The notes beneath the pieces were generated by a model. That model was not told where the DNA came from and did not search any database. It saw nothing but the letters and a program-made list of their open reading frames with translations. This document shows positions 7,542-40,834 of a stretch of DNA of 64,000 nt, piece after piece. Both the position numbers and the translations under genes were made by a program. Source of the stretch: Selaginella moellendorffii (lineage: Eukaryota > Plantae > Lycopodiophyta); NCBI RefSeq assembly GCF_000143415.4, contig NW_003314271.1, forward strand, positions 2,733,729 to 2,797,728, read 5' to 3'. The stretch's first letter is position 1, and every line of letters begins with the position of its first letter.

Positions 7542-7649
7542 CTTGGCCTTGGTGATCGTCGAGTTTCATGTTGGACGTGAAGAGCTGGACGAGATCGATG
7601 GCGGCTGGGCTTGCTCTAGATCACAAGCTCCAGGTCTTCAACAAGCTGA

Positions 7650-10148: not shown

Positions 10149-10185
10149 AAGCCCTAAGGTAAGGGGAATACATATAATTTACACA

Positions 10186-12015
<1,830 letters not shown>

Positions 12016-15200: not shown

Positions 15201-15600
15201 TCCACTGTCCACGAGAAAAAGAAAGGATCAGGCTACATGCAAGAAAAGCAAAGAAGAAAAGAACATACCTGTGGTAAGGCCCGACGATGGAAACCAGCGA
15301 AACTGGCTCTTTGATGGCGGCCAGCTTTTCAAGAACTACTTCGTTTACCTCGAGCCTGTCGTGCCCCGCCGCTGGCTTCAAGAGCTGGAAAGCCTCCTCT
15401 TCCTCGTCCTCGCCGAGCGGCAAATCCGCAAGCGCTACTTGAAGCATCTCCCTCTGCTGCTGCGAAATCACGAGCGCGGCGTCGTCACCATCAGCACGAT
15501 CGTCATCTTCTATCACGGTAATCTCCAACTGCGCGCACAGGGACGACACAAAAACCCCGAGCACGGCCAAGGCGAGGACGCCGCGCCGAGAGACCCTCAT
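12292..15600 (-). CDS. Guanylate-binding protein (GBP/atlastin-fold GTPase)-like protein with N-terminal signal peptide and C-terminal transmembrane helix, multi-exon
   Basis: Hydrophobic leader RRGVLALAVLGVFVSSLCA; P-loop IVGPYH|SGKSFLLN; ETRGVW; LLDTEGF; YDARIFAVSTLISSHLVYN; helical region; TM FNFAVLSAFVVGTMGFVYFLL. Confidence 0.8.
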
Positions 15601-15603
15601 CGC

Positions 15604-15645
15604 CAAGAACCCTAAAAAACTAAAGCTCTGTTTTTAGGGTTCTTG
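15604..15645. repeat. Perfect 15-bp inverted repeat with 12-nt loop at the PPR stop / GBP start junction
   Basis: CAAGAACCCTAAAAA (15604-15618) ... TTTTTAGGGTTCTTG (15631-15645). Confidence 0.9.
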
Positions 15646-17590: not shown

Positions 17591-17868
17591 GAGCCGTCAA
17601 GACTAGGTTTTATAACGAATATTTGCCACCTTTTTTGCAATCCCTTTGGCGCTCATTTGCTTTTCAAGGCCAAAGTTTTTAATATGGTGATCTTTCATTT
17701 CCCTCAACTAAAGACACTCTTGACAGGCCAAGATCGCTGAAATCACTCTCCTCGCTCAAACGTCTCCTTGACATAACTAGAATGGCATTGGATCACTGGA
17801 TGCCGTAGCTGGCCTAAGCCACAATTCATTAAAGTCAGGATCCCGGTGATCCATGTACTAGAAGATTG

Positions 17869-20698
17869 TGTAGAAATATCCAGATCAGATCCACAAGCTA
17901 ACGTGGAGGCCATGTAAATATTTATATGCAGAAAATACAAAGTGGTAGTTATGGGAAAAGAATGCGTAACCGCCTCCAAGTCTAACATGGTATCCGAGCC
18001 GAGGGAAATGACGCTTGGGAGAAGCAACAGAAAAGTCTTGGTGAGAGCAAGCAGATCTTGATCACTCACGAGCCATTCTCCAGCGTGTGAACGATCGATT
18101 GCAGAAGAAGACACAAGAAAAACGACATCGAGCAATCGAATGCTTTTTGTCCAGCAAGGTTGCCAGTGGTTGAAACCCTTGCAGGAATGACGACAAGCAA
18201 AGCCTTTCCGATCCCGATGTTTAGTGGCACTGATTTTGAAAACTGGACGAAAGAGATTATGTTCATTTTTCTCCTATACGATTTTCTTAGAATTGTCCAG
18301 GGTACAGAGCTCAAATCAGCAGCCAGTGACTAAGAAGAATCGTTGTCCTTGATGGGCATTGGAACCTTTTAACAAGTCATGGACCTGCTTCCTTTACGAA
18401 ATTACGAGCTCTCCTAAACTGGTGAGCTGGGACAGAATAGAGGCCTAGAAATGTCGCTGGAGACTCGTCAGATCCCATTCTAAACCCGAAGAACTTAGAC
18501 TTCAACTCCACTTACTTGATTGCCAAACGTGGTCTTCAAGGTCGTCCAATGTTCAGCAGCTGTCTTTGTGAGGTCAAGATGGTGGTGATGAAGCTTTCCA
18601 AGTCCAATGCCCATCAGAGGAAAACACGTTGTCATTCCTCGCATGCCATTCTTCTTAGTCACTGGCTGCTGATTTGAGCTCTGTCCCCTGGACAGTTCGA
18701 AGACAATTGTCCCGGAGAAAAATGAACGAGACCAGTTTTTAAATTTAAGAGTTCAAGCTCCAATTTTACTTGAAGAGGAATCGGGCACTAGACAGCGCCA
18801 GCAGCAAGGCGCTCAGCAGGCGAAGAGAAGTAGTCTCAGCAAGAAACCGAGATCCCGCCCAGGAGGAGCAGCCAGTCTCATCTGATCACGAAGATGAAGT
18901 CCTCACGCCCTTTGACGATGGTTTCATGTTCGATACACTTTTTTCTGAGTCTGGTGATGCTGGTGCAGCAGCCGCAGTGCCAGCAGCTCCTCAGTCGCCA
19001 ACAGCTATGCCATCGTCTTCTTGTCCCTTTCAGACTGCAGCGGCAGAGTCAGTTACTTGTCACAGCGTGCCTTAAGAGTCTCGCAGCATGGACACAAATA
19101 TTTTGCTGCAGTAGGACATGCTTTGGTTGAGCCAAAGTCTGTCCAGGAAGCTCTTACTTCTCCAGAGGCAAAGCAATGGCGAGCAGCCAACTCGCTCCTT
19201 AAGAACCAGGTAAGGGATTTAGTTCCACTATCAGCAGGCCACAAGGTCGTCAGTACCAAATGGTTGTTCAAACTCAAGCTCAACACTACTGATGAGGTGA
19301 TGTGTTACAAAGCTCGTTTTGTAGCCAAAGGATTTTCTCAGGTGGCAGGTTTTCTGCCACCTGAGAAATTAAGAAGATTGTGGTACCATCTTCCCCAATG
19401 GTAAAGATAGTGTCCATTCTACTTCTTTTCCAGATTGCAAATTGCTGGAATCTTGAAGTTCACCAGCTATGGCGAGTTGCAGAAGGAGGTTTTTGTTTCA
19501 CAGCCTGAAAGCTTCATCTAGAAAGGAAGTGAGACGTTTGTTTGCAGGCTTAAAAAAGCACTCTATGATTTGCGGCAATAGCGCAGATTGTGGTATAACC
19601 ATGTTGACAGGTTTCTCTAACATCTTGGCATTATCAAAATTTAAGCAGATGGCAACTTCTACAAATTCTTTTCAAGACACAACTTCACTCTCCTTGCTGT
19701 GGATGACAATTTGATAACAGCCTCTGAGCTAAATCTGGTATGTTATTTTGAGCAATGTTTTTTTTTTATCAAAATTTGAGATCTCGAGGTGTTCTAGGCA
19801 GGTGTCATTGAACTCTCTCAGGCATACTAGGAGGAAGTTCTCAGCAAGCCAATTGCAATGCCATTTCCAACAAGTAAAATGCCAAGCCAATGGCAATGCC
19901 ACTTCCAACAGGCCTACTCCTTATGACAACACAAAGTCCTTTATCTGAGGAGGAGAAGTAGGCTATGGAAAACGTTCCATATAAGCAAGTTGTTAGATGT
20001 TTGCTTTATTTGGCAGTATGCACAAGACTAAACTTGGCCTTTGCAGTTGGCATAGAGTGTTATTAAATGGGTTATGAGATATCTAGAGAACTACATCGAA
20101 GTATAGGTTGAGATATAGCAACAAGTAACAAACTGCTCTCAGAAACAGTGGGAGCAGCCACAGGATGTATCTTACTCTCATATTAGGCAGGTGATAACAT
20201 ATCTAGAAAATCAACATCAAGCTACTTTTTTTTTTGGATGTCAACTGGACCAGCAAGAGGCAAGTTACCATAGCTCTATCAAGTACAGAAGCTGAGCACA
20301 CTGGAGCTACCTTTGCAACACTTGTGGTTGCAGCAGATTGAGATTCAAGTTCCACAAGATCTTTTGCAACAATTGAAGTGCCATCGAATTGTCAAAAAAC
20401 CCGAAGTACCATTCAAGAACAAAACACTTGACATAAAGGTACACTTTATTAGAGAGCACGTTGAGCGAAAGAAGATTTTCTTGGAGTACATTTTTACCAA
20501 GGAAATGGTTGCTGATATTTTGACCAAGACACTAGCTCGAAACAAATTTGAGCTACACAGATCAGATGCAGATCATGGAGCCTCCCTGAGTGGGAGTGTA
20601 GAAACATCCAGATTGGATCCACGAGCTAATGTGGAGGCCATGTAAATATTTATATGGACAAAATTGGTAGTTAAGGGAAAAGAACCTCGAAGTTTAAC
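17869..20698 (+). mobile_element. Degenerate Ty1/copia LTR retrotransposon with very short LTRs (5' LTR 17869-17987, 119 bp; 3' LTR 20597-20698)
   Basis: TG...CA 5' LTR followed by Met-i PBS TGGTATCCGAGCC (17988-18000); PPT GAGTGGGAG; gag remnant FSGTDFENW; RT EPKSVQEAL, KWLFKLK, YKARFVAKGFSQ; RNase H ALSSTEAE, DIKVHFIREH, MVADILTK; many stops and frameshifts. Confidence 0.92.
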
Positions 20699-21100: not shown

Positions 21101-21496
21101 TAAACAAACGTATTTTCTCTTCCCTTCTCCTAAGATTGTCTAGTCCTCGTGTATATGTTCTATGAAGTGAAAGATCACCATATTGACAAAAACTCAAGAG
21201 CTCCAGCAAACAAACCCTGCCTGGTTTGCAGTGAAATCTCAGAAAAGAAGACGAGCAAGAAAGCAGCAGCGGCAGCAGCAGCAGCCTGGTGGAAGATCTT
21301 GTAAAGTAACTTCGCGCCGATCGATCTTGTCATTTCCCTCCACGCATCCATCCCTGCATTCTCTAGCAAAAATATCTGCAGCTGTCAATCAATTCTTCCT
21401 TATGCTCGCTGCATTCCCTTGTATGTTATGGTATCTTAACGGGCTGTGGCTCACCCATTAACTTGATCCAGCCGTTGGCAGCCGTCGGATCAAGTC

Positions 21497-21660
21497 AGGT
21501 TCTCTGTGAAAATTTTACTGTTGTCAGCCACATTCTGGAGAACGTGGCTGACAGCTACCAGGTTTTAGAGAACCCACCTGCCAGCCGCCAGGTTCTGGAG
21601 AACGTGGCTGCTGTCATCCAGGTTCTAGAGAACTTGGCTGCCAGTAACCACGTTCTCCAA
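21497..21660. repeat. Subterminal 30-bp minisatellite (~5.5 copies) inside each array unit
   Basis: Period-30 CAGGTTCTGGAGAACGTGGCTG... repeats; also at ~24763, ~28030 and ~31297. Confidence 0.85.
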
Positions 21661-21683
21661 TCAGACGAGATGCAATTGCTTTT

Positions 21684-24000
21684 TTATTTTTTAATCAAAG
21701 CAAGCTTGAATAATTCAAGCTCACTTTGGCTATGACCATTGACTACAATCACATAATTACTCACAGAACAGTGGTGAAATGTGCTAGTGATCGTCGGTAG
21801 TGCTAAAGCTTTTACAGCTCTTGGATCTTTCGCAAGAGCTAAAAGTAGCTCATTGTCATCAAGATCTACCAAATAACATCAAAAGTTAGAAATAAAGAAT
21901 TCAAATCAAATAAACTTTACCTTTGTCTCCAGAAATGGATTCCTGCTGCTCGCCATGCTCCGGCACAAGCTCTGGCACAGTCTTGTGCACAATCTCGTGT
22001 TGCTTGTCGTGTCCACTTGAAACAAAGAGAAAACTAAATTGAAAGAAAAAAGGAAAGAAAGAATTTTCTTACCTTACTGCTCTTCAATCACGTCCAGAAC
22101 TTGGTGGTGATTCAGTTCCTGTTCGTGGATCTCTTCTCTTGGAGAAGGTTGTTGCTGCCCAAAACCACCTAAAATCGAGAAAAGAGAAAAGTCCATTATA
22201 AAGATTATAAAGTTTCTTACCAAAATTTTGTTGTTGCTGCTCACGATTTTGAGTCTGTTGATTGTCATTTCCACCTAAATTGAAGAGTGTTAAACCTCCA
22301 CAAAAAAAAAAGCTTTGAATTACCAAAAGAAACAAGATGGCAATCTTGAAGATCCAATAGATCTTCATTTAAAGGTTTACCAGCCTCATAGCACCGTACA
22401 ATATACTCCGATGCTTTCTGAAATTTGTCTTGGTAGTTTTTCAAACGACCAGTATGATCATACCAGTTATACAGAATAGATGACATTGCCATTCTCCTTG
22501 CTTTCCCAGAGTGATCGTACCTGTTAAAAAAAGAGGCATTAATGACAAAATGGTTAGCAAAAACCTTACTGTTCCATGTTTTCCACCCTCTTGTGTCCCA
22601 TCAGCTTCATATAGTCTTTCATTGGAGTGTTGCAAACACTCATAGTTGTAATTGCTGAATGCCGAATATCTTTCGCTGAAAGGCTCAAACCTGGAGAAAA
22701 AAAACTATGAGAAAACAAGAAAGCAGTTAGTTAATTACCTGTTTTTTTGGCAACCAATTTTACTACTTCAGAGATCTTATGCTCTCCTATCCGTGCCACT
22801 CGACAGTACCAATTATCAGTCCTGTTGAAACAGTCGTTACAAGCCAGGAAAAACGGCCGCTTGTTCAAGTCCTCCCCATCACCAACTGTTGGATGCTTAT
22901 CAAAAAAAAGCTTGAATGCCTTGTAGACTGAGGGAGCAGCTATTTCATAGAGATCCACAGCAGGCTGCTGATCCATGTTCTTACAATTCATCAGATCCAC
23001 TTCGTAGTTTTTGGAAACACGTTGGTTGAATTTGAGATAAAAAAAATTCTGATTAGAACCAATAAGAACAAAGAAAACAAATAAGAAACTACTCAATTGA
23101 ATATAGCAACCAACAACATCTTCCAAAAGTGTAAAATCAGTGAATCGCAAGTCGTACAATTCCTTCCTCCCATGTACAAGAAAGAAATTCATGCAGAATA
23201 GTAAGACTAACCGAAACAGTCCATTAGGACTGTTAGGTAGAAACTCTGGCAATGTGAGAACTGCCTTAAGCTCAGCCATCCACAAGTACACATGCTTTGA
23301 CCCTGTACTTGTTGGCCTTGTAGTTTCTAGTGTTGCTTTTCAAATTACATGGCTAGCAGCGTTCCTAGAATAAACAAACCAAACCAAACATATTAGAACA
23401 CAAACCACAACAAAAAGAACAAAAAAAGCAAGATACCTTGCTGTAAGAAACCTTGGATCATTCAGGATGTCAACTTCTTCTTCCAAAACTCCTGTTCTTG
23501 CAACTCAGGCTTCTCTTGCCAGCTTCAATACTCGGTTAAAGCAAAAAAACATATCCCTTAGAGTTGTTGGAGGGTAAGGCTTCCCATCGTCTCTCAAAAC
23601 ATGCTTGTAGAACAATGCAAGCTGGTGGGAAAGCTCCTACAGTCAGAGAAAGATGTAGTCACAAAAATCAAAAGAAAAAATAAGAAACAACCTTTGCAGG
23701 AAGTTCCTCAATCAGTCTCAGATCCTGTAAGGAAAATTCTGGGCCCTGTGCCTCGTGCCATGCATAAAACTTCTATGTTGCCTACTCATTCTTCTTTCGG
23801 GTCCCTGCTGGTATAACTAGTTTCATGGATTCTCGTCCTCCTCATTCGGAACAATTGGTCGAAAAGGTTGGCGGCCAACCTGCATCAACAAACAATTTCA
23901 ACCTGGAGTATCTAAGCAAAAAGCACTTACCTCTCTCCGACCACGCCCACCACGCCCACCACGCCCACTGCGATTCCTCCCAGGACAAACCTATCAAACT
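21684..24000 (-). pseudogene. Tyrosine recombinase (Crypton/DUF3504-like), unit 1, ~11 exons; start codon not resolved
   Basis: Spliced translation: IPAGTRKKNE*ATxKFYAW...LALFYKHVLRDDGKPYPPTTLRDMF...FLV(H/R)GRKELYDL...QRVSKNY...RPFFL...NWYCRVARIGEHKI...T|GLSLSAKDIRHSAITTM...MKLMGHKRVENMEQ|YDHS...MAMSSIL...TFHHCSVSN; internal stops. Confidence 0.85.
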
Positions 24001-24562
24001 CAAACGATTGCAAGTGAGTAAACAAGAATACATAAAAACTAGAGAACCGAATTCAAGAAAGGAGCTGCGTTCTCAACAAGATCAGCGGCATTCTGGGACA
24101 ATCCCAGATCAAATGAAGGAGGATCCATCTACAGATAGACAAAATCGAGAGGATTGAGAAGGAAAAACTATGAAATCCAGAGAAAACCAGGAAATGAGGG
24201 CAAACCAGGATTATCAGCTCTCAAGCTGCTCTCGACGCATACAAGCTCCTGCTGCCTTGAGCGCCACAAGAAACTGCTGCAAAATTCCTGAAACACACGG
24301 ACAAGGAGCAGATCTGGATCAATCTAGTTGCTATGCCTCAGATCTGACCTTGGCAAGCTGCTGCTGCCCTGCCGCTGCTGCTGACGCCTTGCCGCTACTG
24401 CTTTGTCGCTGCCATTGCCGCTTCTGAGAGAATCCGACAGCCTCACGGCGTCGGCACAAAAAACCCTAAAACCCTAGAAAACATGTTATATGTGACTTTT
24501 AGCCACGTGTTCTATGTTCATTCGACCGCTCTCATCCTCGAATAACGTTATTCCATGTGTCC

Positions 24563-24728
24563 GTTAACGGTCTCGCCACAGCTTGTTAAGGCTGTTCCCG
24601 GGCACGGGCTTGCACGTTCCCTCCAGAACGCGCTTGCCGGGCTAACGCCCGGCTCGCCCGTTCTAGGCGGGAACGTGCTCGCCCTACTTAGGAACTCCTT
24701 CTTAACGGGCTGTGGCTCGCCCGTTAAC
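24563..24728. repeat. ~165-bp GC-rich imperfect palindrome spanning the unit junction (also 27829-27994 and ~31096-31261)
   Basis: Centre GCCGGGC-TAAC-GCCCGGC; paired blocks GCACGTTCCC/GGGAACGTGC, GTTCCCGGG/CCCGGGAAC (intact at junction 2) and GCCACAGCCCGTTAAG/CTTAACGGGCTGTGGC (consensus of copies). Confidence 0.9.
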
Positions 24729-24949
24729 TTGATCCAGCCGTTGGCAGCCGTCGGATCAAGTCAAGCTCTCTACGAGAATTTTACTGTTGTCAGCCACATT
24801 CTGGAGAACGTGGTTGACAGCTACCAAATTCTCGAGAACCCACCTGCCAGCCGCCAGGTTCTGGAGAACGTGGCTGCTGTCATCCAGGTTCTAGAGAACT
24901 TGGCTGCCAGTAACCACGTTCTCCAATCAGACGAGATGCAATTGCTTTT

Positions 24950-27265
24950 TTATTTTTTAATCAAAGCAAGCTTGAATAATTCAAGCTCACTTTGGCTATG
25001 ACCATTGACTACAATCACATAATTACTCACAGAACAGTGGTGAAATGTGCTAGTGATCGTTGGTAGTGCTAAAGCTTTTACAGCTCTTGGATCTTTCGCA
25101 AGAGCTAAAAGTAGCTCATTGTCATCAAGATCTACCAAATAACATCAAAAGTTAGAAATAAAGAATTCAAATCAAATAAACTTTAACTTTGTCTCTAGAA
25201 ATGGATTCCTGCTGCTCGCCATGCTCCAGCATAGGCTCTGGCATAGTCTCGTGCACAGTCTCGTGTTGCTTGTCGTGTCCACCTGAAACGAAGAAAAAAC
25301 TAAATTGAAAGACAAAAGGAAAGAAAGAATTTTCTTACCTTACTGCTCTTCAATCACGTCCAGAACTTGGTGGTGATTCAGTTCCTTTTCGTGGATCTCT
25401 TCTCTTGGAGAAGGCTGTTGCTGCCCAGAACCACCTAAAATCGAGAAAAGAGAAAAGTCCATTATAAAGATTATAAAGTTTCTTACCAAAATTTTGTTGT
25501 TGCTGCTCACGATTTTGAGTCTGTTGATTGTCATTTCCACCTGAATTGAAGAGTGTTAAACCTCCACAAAAAAAAAAAGCTTTGAATTACCAAAAGAAAC
25601 AAGATGGCAATCTGGAAGATCCAATGGATCTTCATTTAAAGGTTTACCAGCCTCATAGCACCATACAATATACTCCGATGCTTTCCGAAATTTGTCTTGG
25701 TAGTTTTTCAAACGACCAGTATGATCATACCGGTTATACAGAATAGATGACATTGCCATTCTCCTTGCTTTCCCAGAGTGATCGTACCTGTTAAAAAAAG
25801 AGGCATTAATGACAAAATGGTTAGCAAAAACCTTACTGTTCCATGTTTTCCACCCTCTTGTGTCCCATCAGCTTCATATAGTCTTTCATTGGAGTGTTGC
25901 AAACACTCATAGTTGTAATTGCTGAATGCCGAATATCTTTCGCTGAAAGGCTCAAACCTGGAGAAAAAAAACTATGAGAAAACAAGAAAGCAGTTAGTTA
26001 ATTACCTGTTTTTTCGGCAACCAATTTTACTACTTCAGAGATCTTATGCTCTCCTATCCGTGCCACTCGACAGTACCAATTATCAGTCCTGTTGAAACAG
26101 TCGTTACAAGCCAGGAAAAACGGTCGCTTGTTCAAGCCCCCCCATCACCAACTGCTGGATGCTTATTAGAAAAAAGCTTGAATGCCTTGTAGACTAAGGG
26201 AGCAGCTATTTCATAGAGATCCACAGCAGGCTGCTGATCCATGTTCTTACAATTCATCAGATCCACTTCGTAGTTTTTGGAAACACGTTGGTTGAATTTG
26301 AGACAAAAAAAATTCTGATTAGAACCAATAAGAACAAAGAAAAAAAAAAAGAAACTACTCAACTGAATATAGCAACCAACAACATCTTCCAAAAGTGTAA
26401 AATCAGTGAATCGCCTGTCGTACAATTCCTTCCTCCCATGTACAAGAAAGAAATTCATGCAGAATAGTAAGACTAACCGAAACAGTCCATTAGGACTGTT
26501 AGGTAGAAACTCTGGCAATGTGAGAACTGCCTTAAGCTCAGCCATCCACAAGTACACATGCTTTGACCCTGTACTTGTTGGCCTTGTAGTTTCTAGTGTT
26601 GCTTTTCAAATTACATGGCTAGCAGCGTTCCTAGAATAAACAAACCAAACCAAACATATTAGAACACAAACCACAACAAAAAGAACAAAAAAAGCAAGAT
26701 ACCTTGCTGTAAGAAACCTTGGATCATTCAGGATGTCAACTTCTTCTTCCAAAACTCCTGTTCTTGCAACTCAGGCTTCTCTTGCCAGCTTCAATACTCG
26801 GTTAAAGCAAAAAAACATATCCCTTAGAGTTGTTGGAGGGTAAGGCTTCCCATCGTCTCTCAAAACATGCTTGTAGAACAATGCAAGCTGGTGGGAAAGC
26901 TCCTACAGTCAGAGAAAGATGTAGTCACAAAAATCAAAAGAAAAAATAAGAAACAACCTTTGCAGGAAGTTCCTCAATCAGTCTCAGATCTTGTAAGGAC
27001 AATTCTGGGCCCTGTGCCTCGTGCCATGCATAAAACTTCAATGTTGCCTACTCATTCTTCTTTCGGGTCCCTGCTGGTATAACCAGTTTCAATGGATTCT
27101 CGTCCTCCTCATTCGGAACAATTGGTCGAAAAGGTTGGCGGCCAACCTGCATCAACAAACAATTTCAACATGGAGTATCTAAGCAAAAAGCACTTACCTC
27201 TCTCCGACCACGCCGACCACGCCCACCACGCCCACTGCGATTCCTCCCAGGACAAACCTATCAAA
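24950..27265 (-). pseudogene. Tyrosine recombinase (Crypton-like), unit 2
   Basis: Same exons as unit 1; additional 1-bp deletion at GDGGA* and a mutated splice donor. Confidence 0.85.
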
Positions 27266-28215
27266 CTCAAACGATTGCAAGTGAGTAAACAAGAATACAT
27301 AAAAACTAGAGAACCGAATTCAAGAAAGGAGCTGCGTTCTCAACAAGATCAGCGGCATTCTGGGACAATCCCAGATCAAATGAAGGAGGATCCATCTACA
27401 GATAGACAAAATCGAGAGGATTGAGAAGGAAAAACTATGAAATCCAGAGAAAACCAAGAAATGAGGGCAAACCAGGATTATCAGCTCTCAAGCTGCTCTC
27501 GACGCACACAAGCTCCTGCTGCCTTGAGCGCCACAAGAAACTATTGCAAAATTCCTGAAACACACGGACAAGGAGCAGATCTGGATCAATCTAGCTGCTA
27601 TGCCTCAGATCTGACCTTGGCAAGCTGCTGCTGCCCTGCCGCTGCTGCTGACGCCTTGCCGCTACTGCTTTGCCGCTGCCACTGCCACTTCTGAGAGAAT
27701 CCGACAGCCTCACGACGTCGGCACAAAAACCCTTAAAACCTAGAAAACATGTTATATATGACTTTTAGCCACGTGTTCTATGTTCATTCGACCGCTCTCA
27801 TCCTCGAATAACGTTATTCCATGTGTCCGTTAACAGTCTTGCCACAGCCTGTTAAGGCCGTTCCCGGGCACGGGCTTGCACGTTCCCTCCAGAACGCACT
27901 CGTCGGGCTAACGCCCGGCTCGCCCGTTCTGGGCGGGAACGTGCTCGCCCTACCCGGGAACTCCTTCTTAACGGGCTGTGGCTCGCCCGTTAACTTCATC
28001 CAGCCGTTGGTAGCTGTCGGATCAAGTCAAGCTCTCTGCGAGAATTTTACTATTGTCAGCCACATTCTGGAGAACGTGGCTGACAGCTACCAGATTCTAG
28101 AGAACCCACCTGCCAGCTGCCAGGTTCTGGAGAACCTGGCTGCTGTCATCCAGGTTCTAGAGAACTTGGCTGCCAGTAACCACGTTCTCCAATCAGACGA
28201 GATGCAATTGCTTTT

Positions 28216-30530
28216 TTATTTTTTAATCAAAGCAAGCTTGAATAATTCAAGCTCACTTTGGCTATGACCATTGACTACAATCACATAATTACTCACAGAA
28301 CAGTGGTGAAATGTGCTAGTGATCGTCGGTAGTGCTAAAGCTTTTGCAGCTCTTGCATCTTTCACAAGAGCTAAAAGTAGCTCATTGTCGTCAAGATCTA
28401 CCAAATAACATCAAAAGTTAGAAATAAAGAATTCAAATCAAATAAACTTTACCTTTGTCTCCAGAAATGGATTCCTACTGCTCGCCATGCTCCGGCACAA
28501 GCTCTGGCACAGTCTCGTGCACAGTCTCATGTTGCTTGTCGTGTCCACTTGAAACAAAGAGAAAACTAAATTGAAAGAAAAAAGGAAAGAAAGAATTTTC
28601 TTACCTTACTGCTCTTCAATCACATCCAGAACTTGGTGGTGATTCAGTTCCTGTTCGTGGATCTCTTCTCTTGGAGAAGGCTGTTGCTGCCCAGAACCAC
28701 ATAAAATCGAGAAAAGAGAAAAGTCCATTATAAAGATTATAAAGTTTCTTACCAAAATTTTGTTGTTGCTGCTCACGATTTTGAGTCTGTTGATTGTCAT
28801 TTCCACCTAAATTGAAGAGTGTTAAACCTCCACAAAAAAAAAAAGCTTTGAATTACCAAAAGAAACAAGATGGCAATCTTGAAGATCCAATGGATCTTCA
28901 TTTAAAGGTTTACCAGCCTCATAGCACCATACAATATACTCCGATGCTTTCCGAAATTTGTCCTGGTAGTTTTTCAAACGACCAGTACGATCATACCGGT
29001 TATACAGAATAGATGACATCGCCATTCTCCTTGCTTTCCCAGAGTGATCGTACCTGTTAAAAAAAGAGGCATTAATGACAAAATGGTTAGCAAAAACCTT
29101 ATTGTTCCATGTTTTCCACCCTCTTGTGTCCCATCAGCTTCATATAGTCTTTCATTGGAGTGTTGCAAACACTCATAGTTGTAATTGCTAAATGCCGAAT
29201 ATCTTTCGCTGAAAGGCTCAAACCTGGAGAAAAAAAACTATGAGAAAACAAGAAAGCAATTAGTTAACTACCTGTTTTTTCGGCAACCAATTTTACTACT
29301 TCAGAGATCTTATGCTCTCCTATCCGTGCCACTCGACAGTACCAATTATCAGTCCTGTTGAAACAGTCGTTACAAGCCAGGAAAAACGGTCGCTTGTTCA
29401 AGCCCCCCCATCACCAACTGCTGGATGCTTATTAGAAAAAAGCTTGAATGACTTGTAGACTAAGGGAGCAGCTATTTCATAGAGATCCACAGCAGGCTGC
29501 TGATCCATGTTCTTACAATTCATCAGATCCACTTCGTAGTTTTTGGAAACACGTTGGTTGAATTTGAGACAAAAAAAATTCTGATTAGAACCGACAAGAA
29601 CAAAGAAAACAAATAAGAAACTACTCAACTGGATATAGCAACCAACAACATCTTCCAAAAGTGTAAAATCAGTGAATCGCAAGTCATACAATTCCTTCCT
29701 CCCACGTACAAGAAAGAAATTCATGCAGAATAGTACAACTAACCAAAACAGTCCATTAGGACTGTTAGGTAGAAACTCTGGCAACGTGAGAATTGCCTTA
29801 AGCTCAGCCATCGACAAGTACACATGCTTTGACCCTGTACTTGTTGGCCTTGTAGTTTCTAGTGCTGCTTTTCGAATTACATGGCTAGCAGTGTTCCTAG
29901 AATAAACAAACCAAACCAAACATATTAGAACACAAACCACAACAAAAAGAACAAAAAAGGCAAGATACCTTGCTGTAAGAAACCTTGGATCATTCAGGAT
30001 GTCAACTTCTTCTTCCAAAACTCCTGTTCTTGCAACTCAGGCTTCTCTTGCCAGCTTCAATACTCGGTTAAAGCAAAAAAACATATCCCTCAGAGTTGTT
30101 GGAGGGTAAGGCTTCCCATCGTCGCTCAAAACATGCTTGTAGAACAATGCAAGCTGGTGGGAAAGCTCCTACAGTTAGAGAAAGATTTAGTCATAAAAAT
30201 CAAAAGAAAAAATAAGAAACAACCTTTGCAGGAATTTCCTCAATCAGTCTCAAATCCTGTAAGGTAAATTCTGGGCCCTGTGCCTCGTGCCATGCATAAA
30301 ACTTCGATGTTGCCTACTCATTCTTCTTTCGGGTCCCTGTTGGTATAACCAGTTTCAATGGATTCTCGTCCTCCTCATTCGGAACAATTGGTCAAAAAGG
30401 TTGGCGGCCAACCTGCATCAACAAACAATTTCAACATGGAGTATCTAAGCAAAAAGCACTTACCTCTCTCCGACCATGCCGACCACGCCCACCACGCTCG
30501 CTGCGATTCCTCCCAGGACAAACCTATCAA
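28216..30530 (-). pseudogene. Tyrosine recombinase (Crypton-like), unit 3
   Basis: Same exons; retains the catalytic-Arg motif FLVRGRKE; stops and a frameshift present. Confidence 0.85.
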
Positions 30531-33315
30531 ACTCAAACGATTGCAAGTGAGTTAGCAAGAATACATAAAAACTAGAGAACCGAATTCAAGAAAGGAGCTG
30601 CGTTCTCAACAAGATCAGGGGCATTCTGGGACAATCCCAAATCAAATGAAGGAGGATCCATCTACAGATAGACAAAATCGAGAGGATTGAGAAGGAAAAA
30701 CTATGAAATCCAGAGAAAACCAGGAAATGAGGGCAAACCAGGATTATCAGCTCTCAAGCTGCTCTCGACGCATACAAGCTCCTGCTGCCTTGAGCGCCAC
30801 AAGAAACTGCTGCAAAATTCCTGAAACACACGGACAAGGAGCAGATCTGGATCAATCTAGTTGCTATGCCTCAGATCTGACCTTGGCAAGCTGCTGCTGC
30901 CCTACCGCTGCTGCTGACACCTTGCCGCTACTGCTTTGCCGCTACCACTGCCACTTCTGAGAGAATCCGACAGCCTCACGGCGTCGGCACAAAAAACCCT
31001 AAAACCCTAGAAAACATGTTATATATGACTTTTAGCCACGTGTTCTATGTTCATTCGACCGCTCTCATCCTCGAATAACGTTATTCCATGTGTCCGTTAA
31101 CGGTCTCGCCACAGCTTGTTAAGGCTGTTCCCGGGCACGGGCTTGCACGTTCCCTCCAGAACGCGCTCGCCGGGCTAATGCCCGGCTCGCCCGTTCTAGG
31201 CGGGAACGTGCTCACCCTACTTAGGAACTCCTTCTTAACGGGCTGTGGCTCGCCCGTTAACTTGATCCAGCCGTTGGCAGCCGTCGGATCAAGTCAAGCT
31301 CTCTGCGAGAATTTTACTGTTGTCAGCCACATTCTGGAGAACGTGGCTGACAGGTACCAGATTCTAGAGAACCCACCTGCCAGCCGCCAGGTTCTGGAGA
31401 ACGTGGCTGCTGTCATCTAGGTTCTAGAGAACTTGGCTGCCAGTAACCACGTTCTCCAATCAGACGAGATGCAATTGCTTTTTTATTTTTTAATCAAAGT
31501 AAGCTTGAATAATTCAAGCTCACTTTGGCTATGACCATTGACTACAATCACACAATTACTCACAGAACAGTGGTGAAATGTGCTAGTGATCGTCGGTAGT
31601 GCTAAAGCTTTTGCAGCTCTTGGATCTTTCGCAAGAGCTAAAAGTAGCTCATTGTTGTCAAGATCTACCAAATAACATCAAAAGTTAGAAATAAAGAATT
31701 CAAATCAAATAAACTTTAACTTTGTCTCCAGAAATGGATTCCTGCTGCTCGCCATGCTCCGGCATAGGCTCTGGCATAGTCTCGTGCACAGTCTCGTGTT
31801 GCTTGTCGTGTCCACCTGAAACGAAGAAAAAACTAAATTGAAAGAAAAAAGGAAAGAAAGAATTTTCTTACCTTTCTGCTCTTCAATCACGTCCAGAACT
31901 TGGTGGTGATTCAGTTCCTGTTCGTGGATCTCTTCTCTTGGAGAAGGCTGTTGCTGCCCAGAACCACCTAAAATCGAGAAAAGAGAAAAGTCCATTATAA
32001 AGATTATAAAGTTTCTTACCAAAATTTTGTTGTTGCTGCTCACGATTTTGAGTCTGTTGATTGTCATTTCCACCTGAATTGAAGAGTGTTAAACCTACAC
32101 AAAAAAAAAAAGCTTTGAATTACCAAAAGAAACAAGATGGCAATCTTGAAGATCCAATGGATCTTCATTTAAAGGTTTACCAGCATCATAGCACCATACA
32201 ATATACTCCGATACTTTCCGAAATTTGTCCTGGTAGTTTTTCAAACGACCAGTATGATCATACCGGTTATACAGAATAGATGACATTGCCATTCTCCTTG
32301 CTTTCCCAGAGTGATCGTACCTGTTAAAAAAAGAGGCATTAATGACAAAATGGTTAGCAAAAACCTTACTGTTCCATGTTTTCCACCCTCTTGTGTCCCA
32401 TCAGCTTCATATAGTCTTTCATTGGAGTGTTGCAAACACTCATAGTTGTAATTGCTAAATGCCGAATATCTTTCGCTGAAAGGCTCAAACCTGGAGAAAA
32501 AAAACTATGAGAAAACAAGAAAGCAATTAATTAACTACTTGTTTTTACAGCAACCAATTTTACTACTTTAGAGATCTTATGCTCTCCTATCCGTGCCCTT
32601 TGACAGTACCAATTATCAGCCTGTTGAAACAGTCGTTACAAGCCAGGAAAAACGGCCGCTTGTTCAAGCCCCCCCATCACCAACTGCTGGATGCTTATCG
32701 AAAAAAAGCTTGAATGCCTTGTAGACTAAGAGAGCAGCTATTTCATAGAGATCCACAGCAGGCCGCCGATCCATGTTCTTACAATTCATCAGATCCACTT
32801 GGTAGTTTTTGGAAACACGTTGGTTGAATCTTGTCAGGAATCCCCCAATTCTTGCCACATTCTTGACTCTTGCCGGATTCCTGACCTGCAGACCACATTC
32901 CTGACTCTCGAGACACTTCCCTATTCCTGACTCTCGAGACACTTCCCTATTCCTGACTCTCGAGACACTTCCCGATTCCTGAGTCTCAAGCCACATTCCT
33001 GATGATGATGTGGTGCCTCCTCGACCTCAGCTATATTTAGGCCATCCTCGATCCAAGAGTGGTGGAGCTTCATCAACCTATAGTATATATAGGTTAGCCT
33101 TGTTCTATTTCTCCACAATCTGAATCAACGCCAGTATATGGCCTTTTCTTTGTTTTCACTAGCTTTTTCTCTTTGTCTTTAGCATTTTCCAGCCTTGATC
33201 TTGTTGGGGGTCTTGACAGTTTGATTCAGATTGTGGTTTTTGCTTTTCTTTTAGCTCGTTTTGATTATTTGATTGCCTTTGTCTTTTTCCCCCTTTCTTT
33301 TCTTTCTTCTTGCCA

Positions 33316-34288
33316 ATGGAGTCTCCAAGCCATCCTGATTTCTTTGCTGAAGTCCTTGCAAAAATCCAATCTGAGAATACCGAGCTGAAGGCGACCCTTC
33401 TTCGCATGCAGCAGGAGCTTGCTTCACTTTCGGCTCAAGGATCCAGCAAAGTTCCTGAACCGAAGGTGAGTTTCCCGGCGAAATTTTCAGGCAAGCGTTT
33501 GGAGCTTCGTGGATTTTTGAACCAAATGGAGCTGATCTTTGCACTTCAACATCGGCGGTACCCCACTCCCGAGTCTCAAATCGGCGCGATTGGGACGTTG
33601 CTTGAGGGTGCAGCTTTGTCATGGTTTTCTCCTCTTCTGGAGAAGAGCATGAAAGGGGTTGTGGTTCCGGAGCTAATGGATCTTCAATTGTTCAAAGAGA
33701 AGCTCGAAACATGTTTTGGCAAGATGGATCGGGTTCGGGCTGCTACCACAAAGATGAGACGTCTCTCTCAGGGGTCTTGTCCTGCCTCGATCTACGCTGC
33801 AGAGTTCCAACTCCTTGCCTTGGACACTCAGTGGGATGAGCGGGCCCTGATTGACCAATTTCGTTTCAGCCTCAACAACGGTGTCAAGGATTTGTTGCTC
33901 ACCATGGAGGATCCCAAGGACCTGTCGGATGCCATCAACAAAGCTGTTTGATGTGACAATCGTCTCTTTGAACATCGTTAGGAAAGTCGCCGCGCCGCTG
34001 TTTTTTCCGTCCCAGACTCAGGAATCCCAGCTTGAGTCTTCGGGGCATACTCCTAAACCTACTGCTCCGGTTCCGATGGATATTTCTGGTACTCCCCGAC
34101 TCATTAGAGGGAAGTTGAGTCCTGCTGAGAAGCAACGTCGAATATCTCATAATCTTTGCCTCTATTGTGCTGATCCTAATCACAAAGCAACTGTATGTCC
34201 CAAGAAGCCTCCTCGACTGCTCGAGTTCACTCTGCCTCAAAGTCCACCTCTATTGCAGTCGGGAAACGACCCTGTCCAAACAGAGTAG
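33316..34288 (+). pseudogene. gag: gag (PEG10/sushi-like capsid plus CCHC knuckle), with internal stops and a frameshift
   Basis: PEPKVSFPAKFSGKRLELRGFLNQ, LEGAALSWF, LSQGSCPASIYAAEF, CLYCADPNHKATVC; stop at 33951. Confidence 0.9.
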
Positions 34289-38019: not shown

Positions 38020-40834
38020 GAAGGGGGTGCTGTCAGGAATCCCCCAATTCTTGCCACATTCTTGACTCTTGCCGGATTCCTGGCTTGCAAACCACATTCC
38101 TGACTCTCGAGACACTTCCCTATTCCTGACTCTCGAGACACTTCCCGATTCCTCAGTCTCGAGCCACATTCCTAATGATGATGTGGCGCCTCCTCAACCT
38201 CAGCTATATTTAGGCCATCCTCGATCCAAGAGTGGTGGAGCTTCATCAACCTATAGTATATATAGGTTAGCCTTATTCCATTTCTCCACAATCTGAATCA
38301 ACGCCAGTCTAAGGCCTCTTCTTTATTTTCACTAGCTTTTTCTCTTTGTCTTTAGCATTTTCCAGCCTTGATCTTGTTGGGGGTCTTGACAAATCTGAGA
38401 CAAAAAAAATTCTGATTAGAACCGACAAGAACAAAGAAAACAAATAAGAAACTACTCAACTGGATATAGCAACCAACAACATCTTCCAAAAGTGTAAAAT
38501 CAGTGAATTGCAAGTCATACAATTCCTTCCTCCCACGTACAAGAAAGAAATTCATGCAGAATAGTACAACTAACCAAAACAGTCCATTAGGACTGTTAGG
38601 TAGAAACTCTGGCAACGTGAGAATTGCCTTAAGCTCAGCCATCGACAAGTACACATGCTTTGACCCTGTACTTGTTGGCCTTGTAGTTTCTAGTGCTGTT
38701 TTTCGAATTACATGGCTAGCAGTGTTCCTAGAATAAACAAACCAAACCAAACATATTAGAACACAAACCACAACAAAAAGAACAAAAAAGGCAAGATACC
38801 TTGCTATAAGAAACCTTAAATCATTCAGGATGTCAACTTCTTCTTCTAAAACTCTTGTTCTTGCAACTCGGGCTTCTCTTGCCAGCTTCAATACTCGGTT
38901 AAAGCAAAAAAACATATCCCTCAGAGTTGTTGGAGGGTAAGGCTTCCCATCGTCTCTCAAAACATGCTTGTAGAACAATGCAAGCTGGTGGGAAAGCTCC
39001 TACAGTCAGAGAAAGATGTAGTCACAAAAATCAAAAGAAAAAATAAGAAACAACCTTTGCAGGAAGTTCCTCAATCAGTCTCAGATCCTGTAAGGAAAAT
39101 TCTGGGCCCTGTGCCTCGTGCCATGCATAAAACTTCGATGTTGCCTACTCATACTTCTTTCAGGTCCCTGCTGGTATAACCAGTTCCAATGGATTCTCAT
39201 CCTCCTCATTCGAACAATTGGTTGAAAAGGTTGGCGGCCAACCTGCATCAACAAACAATTTCAACCTGGAGTATCTAAGCAAAAAGCACTTACCTCTCTC
39301 CGACCACGCCGACCACGCCCACCACGCCCACTGCGATTCCTCCCAGGACAAACCTATCAAACTCAAATGATTGCAAGTGAGTAAACAAGAATACATAAAA
39401 ACTAGAGAACCAAATTCAAGAAAGGAGCTGCGTTCTCAACAAGATCAGTGGCATTCTGGGACAATCCCAGATCAAATGAAGGAGGATCCATCTACAGATA
39501 GACAAAATCGAGAGGATTGAGAAGGAAAAACTATGAAATTCAAAGAAAACCAGGAAATGAGGGCAAACCGGGATTATTAGCTCTCAAGCTGCTCTCGACG
39601 CACACAAGCTCCTGCTGCCTTCAGCACCACAAGAAACTGCTGCAAAATTCCTGAAACACACGGACAAGGAGCAGATCTGGAGCAATCTAGCTGCTATGCC
39701 TCAGATCTGACCTTGGCAAGCTGCTGCTGTCCTGCCGCTGCTGCTGACGCCTTGCCGCTACTGCTTTGCCGCTGCCGCTGCCGCTTCCGAGAGAATCTGA
39801 CAGCCTCACAGCGTCGGCACAAAAAACCCTAAAACCCTAGAAAACATGTTATATATGACTTTTAGCCACGTGTTCTATGTTCATTCGACCTCTCTCATCC
39901 TCGAATAACGTTATTCCATGTGTCCGTTAACGGTCTTGCCACAGCCCGTTAAGGCTGTTCCCGGGCACGGGCTCGCACGTTCCCTCCAGAATGTGCTTGC
40001 CGGGCTTACGCCCGGCTTGCCTGTTCTGGGCAGGAACGTGCTCGCCCTACCCAGGAACTCCTTCGTCGTCGATAGACCATCATTTCTCGCTGTTTTTCGG
40101 TGAGATATTTCGAATAAAAATATCTCACTGTTGCAGGATATTTTGAATTAACTGCTAGGATGAGGCGATCGTCTCGCCCCTCGATCGATGCATATCGGTC
40201 ATGCGTTCGTCTAGCTCATCGGTCAACCCAAGCTAGAGATCTTTAGCTGCCTTTCCGAGCATATCTATAGTGTGCATTTCTGGCAATGACGTGACTCCAC
40301 CAAGCGCTCTAATCTTTCTTCCTGGATCATCGCTTCATCGATCATGACTGTCGTGTTTTTGGCCATTATAGATTATAGAAGGACGAGGACACTAAGCAGG
40401 AGCCGCAGCCTCCCAATGTTCCTGAGGGAAGCGCCAGCGCCAGCACCGTCCGGCGAATCGCAGCAGCCAGAAGCCAATGAAGCCGAGAAGAATCCCCCAG
40501 ATTGGTTCAAGCGAGAGATAAGAAAAAGGTGAGAACTCCTCTATTTTCTTTGTTCATGGTCTTGTTCTTGTTCTTCTTCACCGTGGAAACTTTCCAGGCT
40601 AGACACAAATGGGAAATCCTCTTCTTGCTGACGACGAGTTGATCGACCGCCTCTCAGATTCCATCTCTTCCTCCTCGCCCTCACTGTTGAGCGTAACTTT
40701 GAGATATCCTTCCGCCATTTTCTTCAGAGAACGACAATGGCCCTTGAGAATGAAGGAAAACGATGAAAGGCTTAGAAACTTTTGTTTTCGTTTCGCAATC
40801 AAATTCGCACACGGAGATGCTTTCTTTCCACTTC

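What the first reader, a model, noticed from the sequence alone, without database searches (positions are those of the whole stretch)
24563..24728. 165-bp palindrome that is complete only when the element's two ends are joined
Seen: a long GC-rich imperfect inverted repeat centred on GCCGGGC-TAAC-GCCCGGC (24636-24653). About 138 bp come from the right end and the last ~28 bp from the left end of the next unit, so the TC crossover lies asymmetrically inside one arm. The left terminus is itself a hairpin (TTAACGGGC-n8-GCCCGTTAA). Perfect palindromes GAATAACGTTATTC and CCGTTAACGG lie just upstream, and CTCGCCCGTT recurs. Inference: this may be a recombinase binding array, or a single-strand/cruciform att site (like integron attC or CTXphi attP), or a replication origin for the circle. 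The asymmetric IR layout also recalls Helitron2/Helentron ends.
Basis: partly seen in the sequence, partly recalled or inferred. Interest (0 to 1): 0.8.

Follow-up and report, generated by a model that had tools for sequence, protein, structure and literature searches.

The report
Palindromic end-joint of a plant recombinase transposon
The long palindrome is real and is the head-to-tail joint between tandem copies of a decayed tyrosine-recombinase transposon in the lycophyte Selaginella, so it preserves what the joined ends of this little-understood kind of mobile DNA look like.

Summary
The window is Selaginella moellendorffii scaffold GL377575.1. It holds four head-to-tail copies of a 3,266-bp unit whose only gene is an intron-split, now broken, tyrosine recombinase (YR). 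Each unit-to-unit joint forms a 166-bp imperfect palindrome. It is made of a 28-bp subterminal repeat plus a 105-nt hairpin from the right end, and a 28-bp self-hairpin from the next left end. These joints are the three most stable 170-nt folds in the 64 kb.

The same left terminus bounds a separate truncated copy elsewhere in the genome, so the joint is a true element end and not a nested MITE. A distant relative (about 30% protein identity, metagenomic eukaryote) also carries a >130-bp palindrome. That palindrome is flanked by a 14-nt repeat whose inverse lies beyond its YR gene. Architecture is therefore shared although sequence is not.

My best reading (confidence 0.5) is a circle-junction or att-type site in which an internal "splint" pairs with both termini at the TC crossover. 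The main rival (0.25) is a Helitron2-type rolling-circle element carrying the YR as a passenger, because the end layout matches Helitron2 point for point. No compensatory changes were found, and all copies are fossils.

The parts
21434..24699 (+). Tandem unit 1 (3,266 bp). It begins at the array's left boundary, ..GGTA|TCTTAACGG.
   Evidence: Self-BLAST of the unit; flank sequence.
24700..27965 (+). Tandem unit 2, used as the reference unit.
   Evidence: pairwise identity between units is 96.2-97.7%.
27966..31232 (+). Tandem unit 3.
31233..32829 (+). Tandem unit 4, first part (unit positions 1-1598). It is cut by an LTR retrotransposon insertion.
38392..40062 (+). Tandem unit 4, second part. 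The array ends at ..GGAACTCCT|TCGTCG.
24563..24590 (+). L': a 28-bp subterminal repeat at the right end, the inverse of the left terminus (the '3'-ATIR'). It is itself a small palindrome, TTAACGG..CCGTTAA.
   Evidence: Inverted repeat I5; arm alignment; pairs with 24704-24728 in the MFE fold.
24591..24695 (+). Inner terminal hairpin of about 105 nt, loop TAAC at 24643-24646. It has stems rich in AACG/CGTT cores and three conserved GC-TC-GC mismatch sites.
24696..24701 (+). Joint or crossover region. The unit boundary is 24699|24700 and the ambiguous TC is 24700-24701. In the fold it lies inside the 4-bp stem AAGG (24588-24591) / CCTT (24697-24700).
24701..24728 (+). L: the 28-bp left terminus of the next unit (the '5'-ATIR'). 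It forms its own hairpin, TTAACGGGC-n8-GCCCGTTAA.
   Evidence: Inverted repeats I5 and I19. The same terminus bounds the separate copy at L001:12118.
27829..27994 (+). Second copy of the joint palindrome (units 2/3).
31096..31261 (+). Third copy of the joint palindrome (units 3/4).
39926..40062 (+). Right end of the array: L' plus the inner hairpin without a partner L. This is the integrated 'attR-like' half.
   Evidence: fold minimum -42.9 kcal/mol.
21434..21462 (+). Left end of the array: L alone. This is the integrated 'attL-like' half.
24540..24570 (+). Two perfect short palindromes just inside L': GAATAACGTTATTC and CCGTTAACGG.
24729..24760 (+). Small hairpin TTGATCC-n17-GGATCAA, enclosing CAGCCGTTGG and CAGCCGTCGG. 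The motif CCGTYGGAT is shared with the relative L005.
24774..24923 (+). Four 30-bp tandem repeats with GTTCTnGAGAAC cores. Together they form a second, roughly 124-bp palindromic block.
   Evidence: z = -6.4.
25212..26904 (-). Remnant of the intron-split tyrosine recombinase gene in unit 2; the limits are approximate. Motifs: VRGRKELYDL, SKNYEVDL, KDIRHSAIT, MGHKR, SILYNRYD.
   Evidence: ORF pieces; public model P0001; family alignment and Pfam PF00589 hits in relatives.

Best explanation
The palindrome is the preserved head-to-tail joint, equivalent to a circle junction, of a 3.27-kb tyrosine-recombinase-only (Crypton-like) DNA transposon of Selaginella moellendorffii. The integrated element has asymmetric ends. 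The left end is a 28-bp terminus (L) that folds on itself. The right end carries the inverse of that terminus (L') followed by a 105-nt hairpin that stops about 5 nt before the end. When two ends meet, in a circle or in a tandem array, L pairs with L' around the hairpin and a 166-bp palindrome results. In that fold the segment 24563-24598 acts as a continuous internal splint. It base-pairs with the last bases of one end and the first bases of the other, so the TC crossover sits in a short stem between the outer and inner helices. I infer that this is the cis-acting end-recognition and end-joining (att-type) site on which the element's own recombinase acts. It may act on an extruded or single-stranded folded form, as integron attC and CTX-phage attP do. 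The many AACG-core repeats and the flanking short tandem repeats would serve as protein-binding sites. The four-unit array would then come either from integration of a multimeric circle or from repeated integration next to a resident copy, followed by gene conversion and decay.

Shown: the structure, the ends, the array, the recombinase family, and the shared architecture in one relative.

Inferred: that the recombinase acts here, the folded form, and the origin of the array.
For: (1) The structure is far beyond chance, and the joints are the most stable folds in the window. (2) The array has four precise head-to-tail units with defined outer boundaries and a 2-nt TC overlap. (3) An independent, truncated copy on scaffold GL377669.1 starts within 1 nt of the same left terminus, so the terminus inside the palindrome was used at least twice. 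(4) The unit's only gene is a YR. The motifs R, K, (H/K)xxR, H and Y are present. PF00589 hits 3 of 9 family members (best E = 1.8e-7), with DUF3435 at 1.5e-4 in one member, DUF3504 at 0.012 for the unit-1 ORF piece, and the XerA NCBIfam model at 1.2e-5. No RT or Rep/helicase lies in the unit. (5) The MFE fold puts the joint inside a stem held by a continuous complementary arm. (6) The relative L005 (about 30% identity) has a 136-bp palindrome (z = -15.8) 1.2 kb upstream of its YR. Three nt from that palindrome is a 14-nt sequence whose inverse lies 590 nt past the YR gene; an empirical null gives 0.3%. It also has tandem CCGTYGGAT-containing repeats beside the palindrome, as in Selaginella. 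(7) AACG/CGTT cores reach 12 per 200 bp at each joint, the window maximum, against a mean of 1.13. (8) Three GC-TC-GC sites read the same on both arms in all three joints. The hairpin is therefore strand-asymmetric, and the YR-sense strand folds better in both Selaginella and L005. (9) The searched literature describes Cryptons as moving through a proposed, untested circular intermediate and mentions no structured ends.
Against: The direct repeat at the ends is only TC (2 bp), and only C at L001, not the 4-6 bp reported for Cryptons. No 6-8-bp overlap flanked by inverted binding arms surrounds the crossover, as a classical double-strand YR core site would have. The end layout equals that of Helitron2, whose enzyme is an HUH nuclease. 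No pair shows compensatory change (0 of 68). The right arm is the fastest-decaying part of the unit, so no selection is visible in these dead copies. A second relative, L008, has no comparable palindrome within about 5 kb of its YR. The ends of the L005 element could not be verified because all fetched contigs are one locus. The YR genes in the window are broken.
Confidence: 0.5

Rival explanations
1. The unit is a non-autonomous Helitron2/Helentron-type rolling-circle element that carries the recombinase gene as a passenger. L and L' are its asymmetric terminal inverted repeats and the big hairpin is its 3' terminator. A Rep/helicase encoded elsewhere moves it. The tandem array comes from read-through during rolling-circle replication.
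For: The published Helitron2 definition is met feature by feature. The 5' repeat lies 1-2 nt from the end and forms a 5' hairpin. The 3' repeat lies directly upstream of a 3' hairpin. The 5' terminal base is T, and the insertion is upstream of a T with no target duplication. Palindromic subterminal repeats, internal tandem repeats and tandem arrays are all known for Helentron derivatives. Helitron2 elements exist in S. moellendorffii (Helitron-5_SMo). Helitron2 elements carrying a non-Rep gene (Fanzor) are known.
Against: No Rep/helicase lies in the unit or the window. The repeat (28 bp against 8-15 bp) and the hairpin (105 nt against a few tens) are far larger than described. A YR relative of only about 30% identity, in another organism, has the same large-palindrome-plus-inverse-repeat layout around its YR gene, which a chance gene capture would not predict. 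The fern relatives are multicopy YR-only proteins. The separate copy L001 begins with C, not T.
Confidence: 0.25
2. The palindrome and its neighbouring short tandem repeats form a replication origin (stem-loop plus iterons) for an extrachromosomal circular form. The array would be an integrated replication concatemer.
For: Both Selaginella and L005 have a palindrome immediately next to 4-7 short tandem repeats. Copy-number gain of active Cryptons has been reported. The array consists of precise head-to-tail multimers.
Against: No replication initiator is encoded. The hairpin loop is only 4 nt and has no nick-site-like motif. A tyrosine recombinase nick leaves no 3'-OH primer (established enzymology). 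This reading does not by itself explain why the element ends lie inside the palindrome.
Confidence: 0.08
3. The palindrome is a separate foldback or MITE-like insertion, or a hairpin small-RNA source, that sits in the element by accident and plays no part in its movement.
For: The palindrome is bracketed by TTAA within GTTAAC on both sides, so a TTAA-type insertion cannot be excluded from sequence alone. The copies are methylation-decayed, silenced-looking DNA: 62% of substitutions are C>T or G>A.
Against: No copy exists outside the array in the 64 kb. The element boundary lies inside the palindrome and is reused at an independent locus. A relative shows the same architecture with an unrelated sequence.
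Confidence: 0.05
4. The array is an ordinary segmental tandem duplication made by unequal crossing-over, and its boundaries fall in the palindrome by chance.
For: Identity between units is mosaic, which suggests later gene conversion or unequal exchange.
Against: The L001 copy starts at the same nucleotide, within 1 nt. A random boundary would fall in the palindrome with a chance of about 5%. The first head-to-tail joint still needs an end-to-end joining event.
Confidence: 0.03

Closest known systems
Cryptons (eukaryotic tyrosine-recombinase DNA transposons; Goodwin 2003, Kojima & Jurka 2011)
   Same: The recombinase is the only encoded enzyme and there is no reverse transcriptase. There are no target-site duplications. 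A short identical sequence (TC) sits at both ends. Copy number is low. The proposed intermediate is a circle, which a head-to-tail array mimics.
   Different: Cryptons are described as lacking terminal inverted repeats and as having 4-6-bp direct repeats. This element has a 28-bp asymmetric inverted repeat, a 105-nt terminal hairpin and only 2 bp of repeat. The recombinase has no detectable close tie to the described Crypton clades: an exhaustive search found only fern, lycophyte and metagenome relatives. The searched literature did not mention land-plant Cryptons with defined ends.
Helitron2 / Helentron / HINE-DINE termini (Bao & Jurka 2013; Thomas 2014; Chellapan 2016)
   Same: The 5' repeat lies 0-2 bp from the end and forms a hairpin. 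The 3' repeat lies just upstream of a 3' hairpin. The 5' terminal base is T and the insertion is before a T, with no duplication. Internal tandem repeats, tandem arrays and joined-end circles are all known for this group.
   Different: There is no Rep/helicase here; the gene present is a tyrosine recombinase. The repeat and hairpin are several-fold larger. The layout recurs around a distant YR homologue.
Integron attC and CTX-phage attP (folded single-strand sites of tyrosine recombinases)
   Same: All are imperfect palindromes of about 60-150 nt. The crossover is placed asymmetrically in one arm. The site is split between the two ends of the integrated unit and is whole only in the circle or between adjacent units. 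Almost no homology with the target is needed. Conserved mismatches make the two strands unequal. These properties of attC and attP are from my own knowledge, not tested here.
   Different: Those systems are bacterial, and their recombinases (IntI, XerCD) are not close relatives. Here no single-stranded form, strand choice or cleavage site has been shown. The crossover lies between the outer and inner helices, not in a defined core box.
DIRS1-type internal complementary region (tyrosine-recombinase retroelements)
   Same: An internal segment complementary to both termini can hold the two ends side by side for closure into a circle (ICR mentioned; the model itself is from my own knowledge).
   Different: There is no reverse transcriptase and there are no long inverted terminal repeats. 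The complementary segment here is subterminal and forms part of a hairpin.

Membership tests
Crypton | Encodes a tyrosine recombinase and no reverse transcriptase or other transposase. | tested here: met
   The ORF pieces and public model P0001 are YR-like. The Pfam scan of unit ORFs shows no RT or Rep. The RT/IN ORFs belong to the inserted LTR element.
Crypton | Recombinase keeps the catalytic residues R, (H/K)xxR, H/W and Y. | tested here: met
   The motifs VRGRKELYDL, KDIRHSAIT, MGHKR and NRYD are visible in ORF pieces and are conserved in the fern and metagenome relatives. PF00589 hits 3 of 9 relatives. All four window copies nevertheless carry stops or frameshifts. The AlphaFold model was unusable (pLDDT 38).
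Crypton | Short (4-6 bp) direct repeat at both termini, the same in all copies. | tested here: not met
   Only TC is shared at the array ends. The independent copy L001 shares only C.
Crypton | No terminal inverted repeats. | tested here: not met
   The 28-bp left terminus is inverted at 24563-24590, with 82% complementarity now and more in less-decayed copies.
Crypton | Recombinase groups with a described Crypton clade (F, S, A, I). | tested here: inconclusive
   Only weak matches were found: DUF3504 at E = 0.012 and DUF3435 at 1.5e-4 in one relative. The exhaustive search gave 12 hits, all fern, lycophyte or metagenome. No Crypton reference sequences were on hand for a tree.
Helitron2 / Helentron | Rep/helicase (HUH) transposase in the element, or termini shared with such an element. 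| tested here: inconclusive
   No Rep/helicase lies in the unit or the window. Sharing of termini with Helitron-5_SMo could not be tested: no DNA for it is held and the plant genome is not searchable by DNA.
Helitron2 / Helentron | 5' repeat 0-2 bp from the 5' end, forming a 5' hairpin. | tested here: met
   The sequence TC|TTAACGGGC-n8-GCCCGTTAA starts 1-2 nt from the boundary.
Helitron2 / Helentron | 3' repeat immediately upstream of a 3' terminal hairpin. | tested here: met
   L' (24563-24590) lies 3 nt before the hairpin 24594-24695, which ends about 5 nt before the terminus. The sizes exceed those published: 8-15-bp repeats placed 20-60 bp from the end.
Helitron2 / Helentron | 5' terminal T, insertion upstream of a T, no target duplication. 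| tested here: inconclusive
   This holds for the array: 5' T, right flank TCGTCG. The L001 copy begins with C. No empty site could be fetched.
Folded single-strand att sites (integron attC / CTX attP type) | Imperfect palindrome, split by an asymmetric crossover and restored only in the circle or between adjacent units. | tested here: met
Folded single-strand att sites (integron attC / CTX attP type) | One strand, folded, is the substrate; conserved unpaired bases set the strand. | not testable with these tools
   The evidence is suggestive only. Three conserved TC:TC (bottom strand GA:GA) mismatches occur in all joints. The YR-sense strand folds better in both elements.
MITE / foldback element | Copies occur on their own, away from the recombinase gene, with their own target duplications. 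| tested here: inconclusive
   There are none in the 64-kb window outside the array. The element boundary lies inside the palindrome and is reused at L001. A genome-wide count was not possible.

The most novel reading that the evidence does not exclude
Lycophytes and ferns (and an unidentified metagenomic eukaryote) harbour an undescribed lineage of tyrosine-recombinase transposons. Their ends are built like Helitron2 ends, and they move through a folded, possibly single-stranded, circle-forming intermediate. In that intermediate an internal splint palindrome brings the two termini together for the recombinase. This would be a eukaryotic counterpart of integron attC and CTX attP recombination, and a case of convergence between tyrosine-recombinase and HUH rolling-circle elements.
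Probability: 0.25. Interest if true: 0.85.

Novelty: new variant of a known kind. Interest (0 to 1): 0.6.

Why it matters
According to the papers I could search, up to 2026, the way Cryptons move has never been shown experimentally, and their ends are described as featureless apart from a few repeated bases. A tandem array that preserves the joined ends, together with a large structured site shared in architecture by a distant relative, gives a concrete substrate to test with an intact family recombinase. It also raises the question of why a tyrosine-recombinase element and Helitron2 rolling-circle elements have the same end design. If the rival is right instead, this would be a Helitron2 lineage that has carried a recombinase gene across distant hosts, which would also be unusual. 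There is a practical consequence too: the public annotation fuses the whole array and an inserted retrotransposon into one 1,401-aa 'protein'.

Tried and rejected
- **Compensatory changes:** across the three joints, 0 of 68 pairs changed on both sides. At 96-98% identity this has no power.
- **Rfam:** no family matched at 21-41 kb.
- **Structure prediction:** the AlphaFold model of a fern family member had pLDDT 38, so no fold search was run.
- **PDB by sequence or profile:** the only match was XerC-like at E = 0.32.
- **More relatives with DNA:**
  - The word search found only P0001.
  - The Adiantum loci could not be fetched because the files are too large.
  - The metagenome scan failed once and then found nothing.
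  - The IMG/VR scan returned only a phage integrase, L014, which is irrelevant.
  - Contigs L003-L013 are all one locus, so the L005 element's ends stay unverified.
- **Empty site in the other haplotype:**
  - The PPR-neighbour search returned only about 30% paralogues.
  - A cluster look-up did find the other haplotype (L015, GL377594.1, 98% identity, with a local inversion).
  - The fetchable DNA stops 2.8 kb short of the insertion site.
- **Helitron-5_SMo termini:** the paper's supplement holds only a protein alignment.
- **Rejected readings:**
  - The TATGG near the left flank (a CryptonS-like terminus) is not at the boundary and is absent from the other end.
  - The 30-bp repeats are not heat-shock elements; their spacing gives GAG, not GAA.
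  - The L008 palindromic repeat cluster at about 17.1 kb (z = -9.5) lies 6 kb from the recombinase gene and cannot be linked to it.
- Searches used ORF pieces by reference or the public model P0001.

Full report
**Where the window comes from.** The window is eukaryotic. A locus fetched through a homologous gene model (L002, Selaginella moellendorffii GL377575.1:2745449-2776405) is 100% identical to window 11721-42677. The neighbouring genes are intronless PPR/DYW editing-factor genes typical of land plants.

**The array.**
- Self-comparison shows four head-to-tail copies of a 3,266-bp unit starting at 21434, 24700, 27966 and 31233.
- The fourth copy is interrupted at 32829/32830 by a Ty3/gypsy chromovirus and resumes at 38392. 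The array ends at 40062.
- Outside the array the unit has no other match in the window.
- The left flank reads ..TATGGTA|TCTTAACGG. Each internal joint reads ..GGAACTCCT|TCTTAACGG. The right end reads ..GGAACTCCT|TCGTCGTCG.
- The array is therefore four units plus one extra TC.

**The observation.**
- The palindrome at 24563-24728 is real.
- As single-stranded DNA it folds at -62.7 kcal/mol on the + strand (z = -8.25) and -72.2 kcal/mol on the - strand (z = -11.5).
- In a sliding 170-nt fold of all 64 kb, the three joints are the three most stable windows. The fourth is the array's right end.
- Apart from a second palindromic block in the same element, the 64 kb has no other close inverted repeat of 25 nt or more.

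**Anatomy of the joint.** In window orientation the joint reads as follows.
- L' (24563-24590, 28 bp), then 3 nt.
- An inner hairpin (24594-24695, loop TAAC at 24643-24646), then about 5 nt containing the unit boundary 24699|24700.
- L (24701-24728), which is the next unit's terminus and forms its own hairpin, TTAACGGGC-n8-GCCCGTTAA.

In the minimum-energy fold the left arm 24563-24598 pairs continuously with three segments: the 3' end (24691-24695), the four bases straddling the joint (24697-24700) and the next 5' end (24704-24728). It thus acts as a splint that holds the two termini side by side.

Aligning the two arms shows that three mismatches are of one kind. GC-TC-GC is read on the top strand of both arms in all three joints, giving TC:TC in the top-strand hairpin and tandem GA:GA in the bottom-strand hairpin. 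AACG/CGTT cores occur 12 times per 200 bp, the window maximum against a mean of 1.13.

Just inside the left terminus lie two further features:
- a small hairpin enclosing CAGCCGTTGG and CAGCCGTCGG (24729-24760);
- four 30-bp repeats with GTTCTnGAGAAC cores that form a second palindromic block.

**What the unit encodes.**
- The minus strand carries pieces of an intron-split tyrosine recombinase: VRGRKELYDL, SKNYEVDL, KDIRHSAIT, MGHKR and SILYNRYD.
- I searched the pieces by reference and did not join exons.
- The 202-aa piece found one public model, SELMODRAFT_428622 (P0001).
- An exhaustive HMMER search with P0001 found only 12 proteins at E <= 0.001:
  - the artefactual 1,401-aa model that spans this very array;
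  - several Adiantum (fern) proteins;
  - one JGI metagenome cluster;
  - one ENA contig.
- Alignment shows the conserved recombinase motifs.
- Family-scan matches were:
  - Pfam PF00589 in 3 of 9 members (best E = 1.8e-7);
  - DUF3435 at 1.5e-4 in one member;
  - DUF3504 at 0.012 for the unit-1 ORF piece;
  - the archaeal XerA model at 1.2e-5.
- The unit contains no RT, Rep or helicase.
- By content this is a Crypton-like element, in a rarely sampled plant lineage.

**Are the ends real element ends?** Yes. P0001 lies on a different scaffold (L001, GL377669.1). There a truncated copy (unit positions 2-2338, 94.8% identity) begins within 1 nt of the same left terminus..CCCTAAC|CTTAATGGGCTGTGG. 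The boundary inside the palindrome was therefore used at least twice. This argues against both a chance tandem duplication and a nested MITE.

**State of the copies.**
- The units are 96.2-97.7% identical, with a mosaic pattern.
- 62% of singleton changes are C>T or G>A, many of them at CpG.
- The last 66 bp, in the right arm, are the most diverged part.
- Where copies differ in the palindrome, the CpG-bearing variant pairs better. For example, the array's last copy keeps CACAGCCCGTTAAG, the exact complement of the left terminus. The palindrome was therefore more perfect when the array formed.
- No pair shows a compensatory change (0 of 68). At this identity that neither supports nor refutes a structure.

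**Relatives.** DNA could be fetched for two distant relatives.

L005/L006 come from a metagenomic eukaryote (41% G+C, YR about 30% identical).
- A 136-bp near-perfect palindrome lies 1.2 kb upstream of the YR ORFs. It folds at -86.8 kcal/mol, z = -15.8, and is by far the most stable fold of the contig.
- It is followed at once by four to seven short tandem repeats containing CGTYGGAT. Selaginella has CCGTCGGAT just inside its left terminus.
- Three nucleotides from the palindrome is a 14-nt sequence whose exact inverse lies 4.76 kb away, 590 nt past the last YR ORF. Only 0.3% of random 40-nt windows of that contig have such a match.
- With the YR on the minus strand, this is the same order as in Selaginella: terminal repeat, YR, inverse repeat, 3 nt, large hairpin.
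- Its true ends could not be verified, because every fetchable contig is the same locus.

The second relative, L008, has no comparable palindrome within about 5 kb of its fragmented YR.

The architecture, but not the sequence, is therefore shared in one of the two testable relatives.

**Comparison with known systems.**
- Cryptons are defined by a YR, short 4-6-bp direct repeats and no inverted repeats. Their mechanism is untested, and the proposed intermediate is a double-stranded circle. This element meets the coding criterion but fails both structural ones.
- The published definition of Helitron2/Helentron ends has four layout features, and all are met:
  - a 5' repeat 0-2 bp from the end that forms a hairpin;
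  - a 3' repeat just upstream of a 3' hairpin;
  - a 5' T;
  - insertion before a T with no duplication.
- Tandem arrays, palindromic subterminal repeats and internal tandem repeats are also known in that group, and Helitron2 elements exist in this species.
- The differences from Helitron2 are the absence of Rep/helicase, a repeat and hairpin several-fold larger than described, and recurrence of the layout around a distant YR homologue.
- From my own knowledge, the split-and-restored asymmetric palindrome also works like integron attC or CTX-phage attP, and the splint resembles the DIRS1 internal complementary region. These are resemblances, not memberships.

**Verdict.**
- The most likely reading (0.5) is an end-joining, att-type site of a YR element, possibly used in a folded form.
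- The main rival (0.25) is a Helitron2-type rolling-circle element carrying the YR.
- An origin function (0.08), a nested foldback (0.05) and a chance duplication (0.03) are less likely.

The decisive data are genome-wide copies and empty sites, the termini of Selaginella Rep/helicase Helitrons, the fern loci, and biochemistry with an intact recombinase. None of these was within reach of the tools here.

I took no contig for human.

Noticed in passing
window 32831-38391: A Ty3/gypsy chromovirus LTR retrotransposon is inserted inside the recombinase gene of unit 4. It has an RT/RNase H ORF at 34897-36570 and an integrase + chromodomain ORF at 36601-38019. Its ends are TG..CA, its target duplication is the 5-bp AATCT, and its LTRs are about 360-390 bp and about 90-96% identical.
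   Followed up: partly
window 21434-40062 (L002 10001-20957): The public gene model P0002 (1,401 aa) stitches exons from all four tandem units across the retrotransposon. It is an annotation artefact, not a real protein.
   Followed up: yes
window 24460-24477 (and the same place in each unit): AAAACCCTAAAACCCTAG, two telomere-like (telobox-like) repeats, lies about 85 bp inside the right-end palindrome, on the upstream side of the recombinase gene.
   Followed up: no
window 24774-24923: Four 30-bp tandem repeats each carry a GTTCTnGAGAAC dyad. Together they fold as a second, roughly 124-bp palindrome (z = -6.4). They share the AGAACGTGGCTG-type motif with the joint palindrome.
   Followed up: partly
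window 3732-7541 (+), 7650-10148 (-), 15620-17590 (-): Three intronless PPR genes lie here, one with a DYW deaminase domain and one with an E motif. This fits the very large RNA-editing factor family of Selaginella.
   Followed up: partly
L015 (GL377594.1:670528-693251) versus window 6541-18660: The other haplotype or a paralogous block is 97-98% identical, but the PPR-DYW gene segment (window 6541-10144) is inverted relative to the ADH-GBP-PPR block.
   Followed up: partly
window 44836-45345: Tandem repeats with periods of 103-113 bp (3.7 copies, 82-89% matches) and 37 bp, of unknown meaning.
   Followed up: no
L008 17087-17250 and 20080-20320: A cluster of direct and inverted repeats, each about 46 nt, is built on the dyad TTTAGCTCGA-C-TCGAGCTAAA (fold z = -9.5). 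It lies 6-10 kb from the recombinase remnant and could not be linked to it.
   Followed up: partly
L001 12119-12145 (minus-strand reading): The left flank of the separate truncated copy contains CGGGAACT 11 nt before the boundary. The same 8-mer lies 5 nt before the boundary at the element's own right end. This may reflect a target preference or a remnant of a former joint.
   Followed up: no
window 51627-53331: Overlapping ORFs match an AAA_33 kinase-like domain and a Macro domain. This is probably one spliced gene.
   Followed up: no
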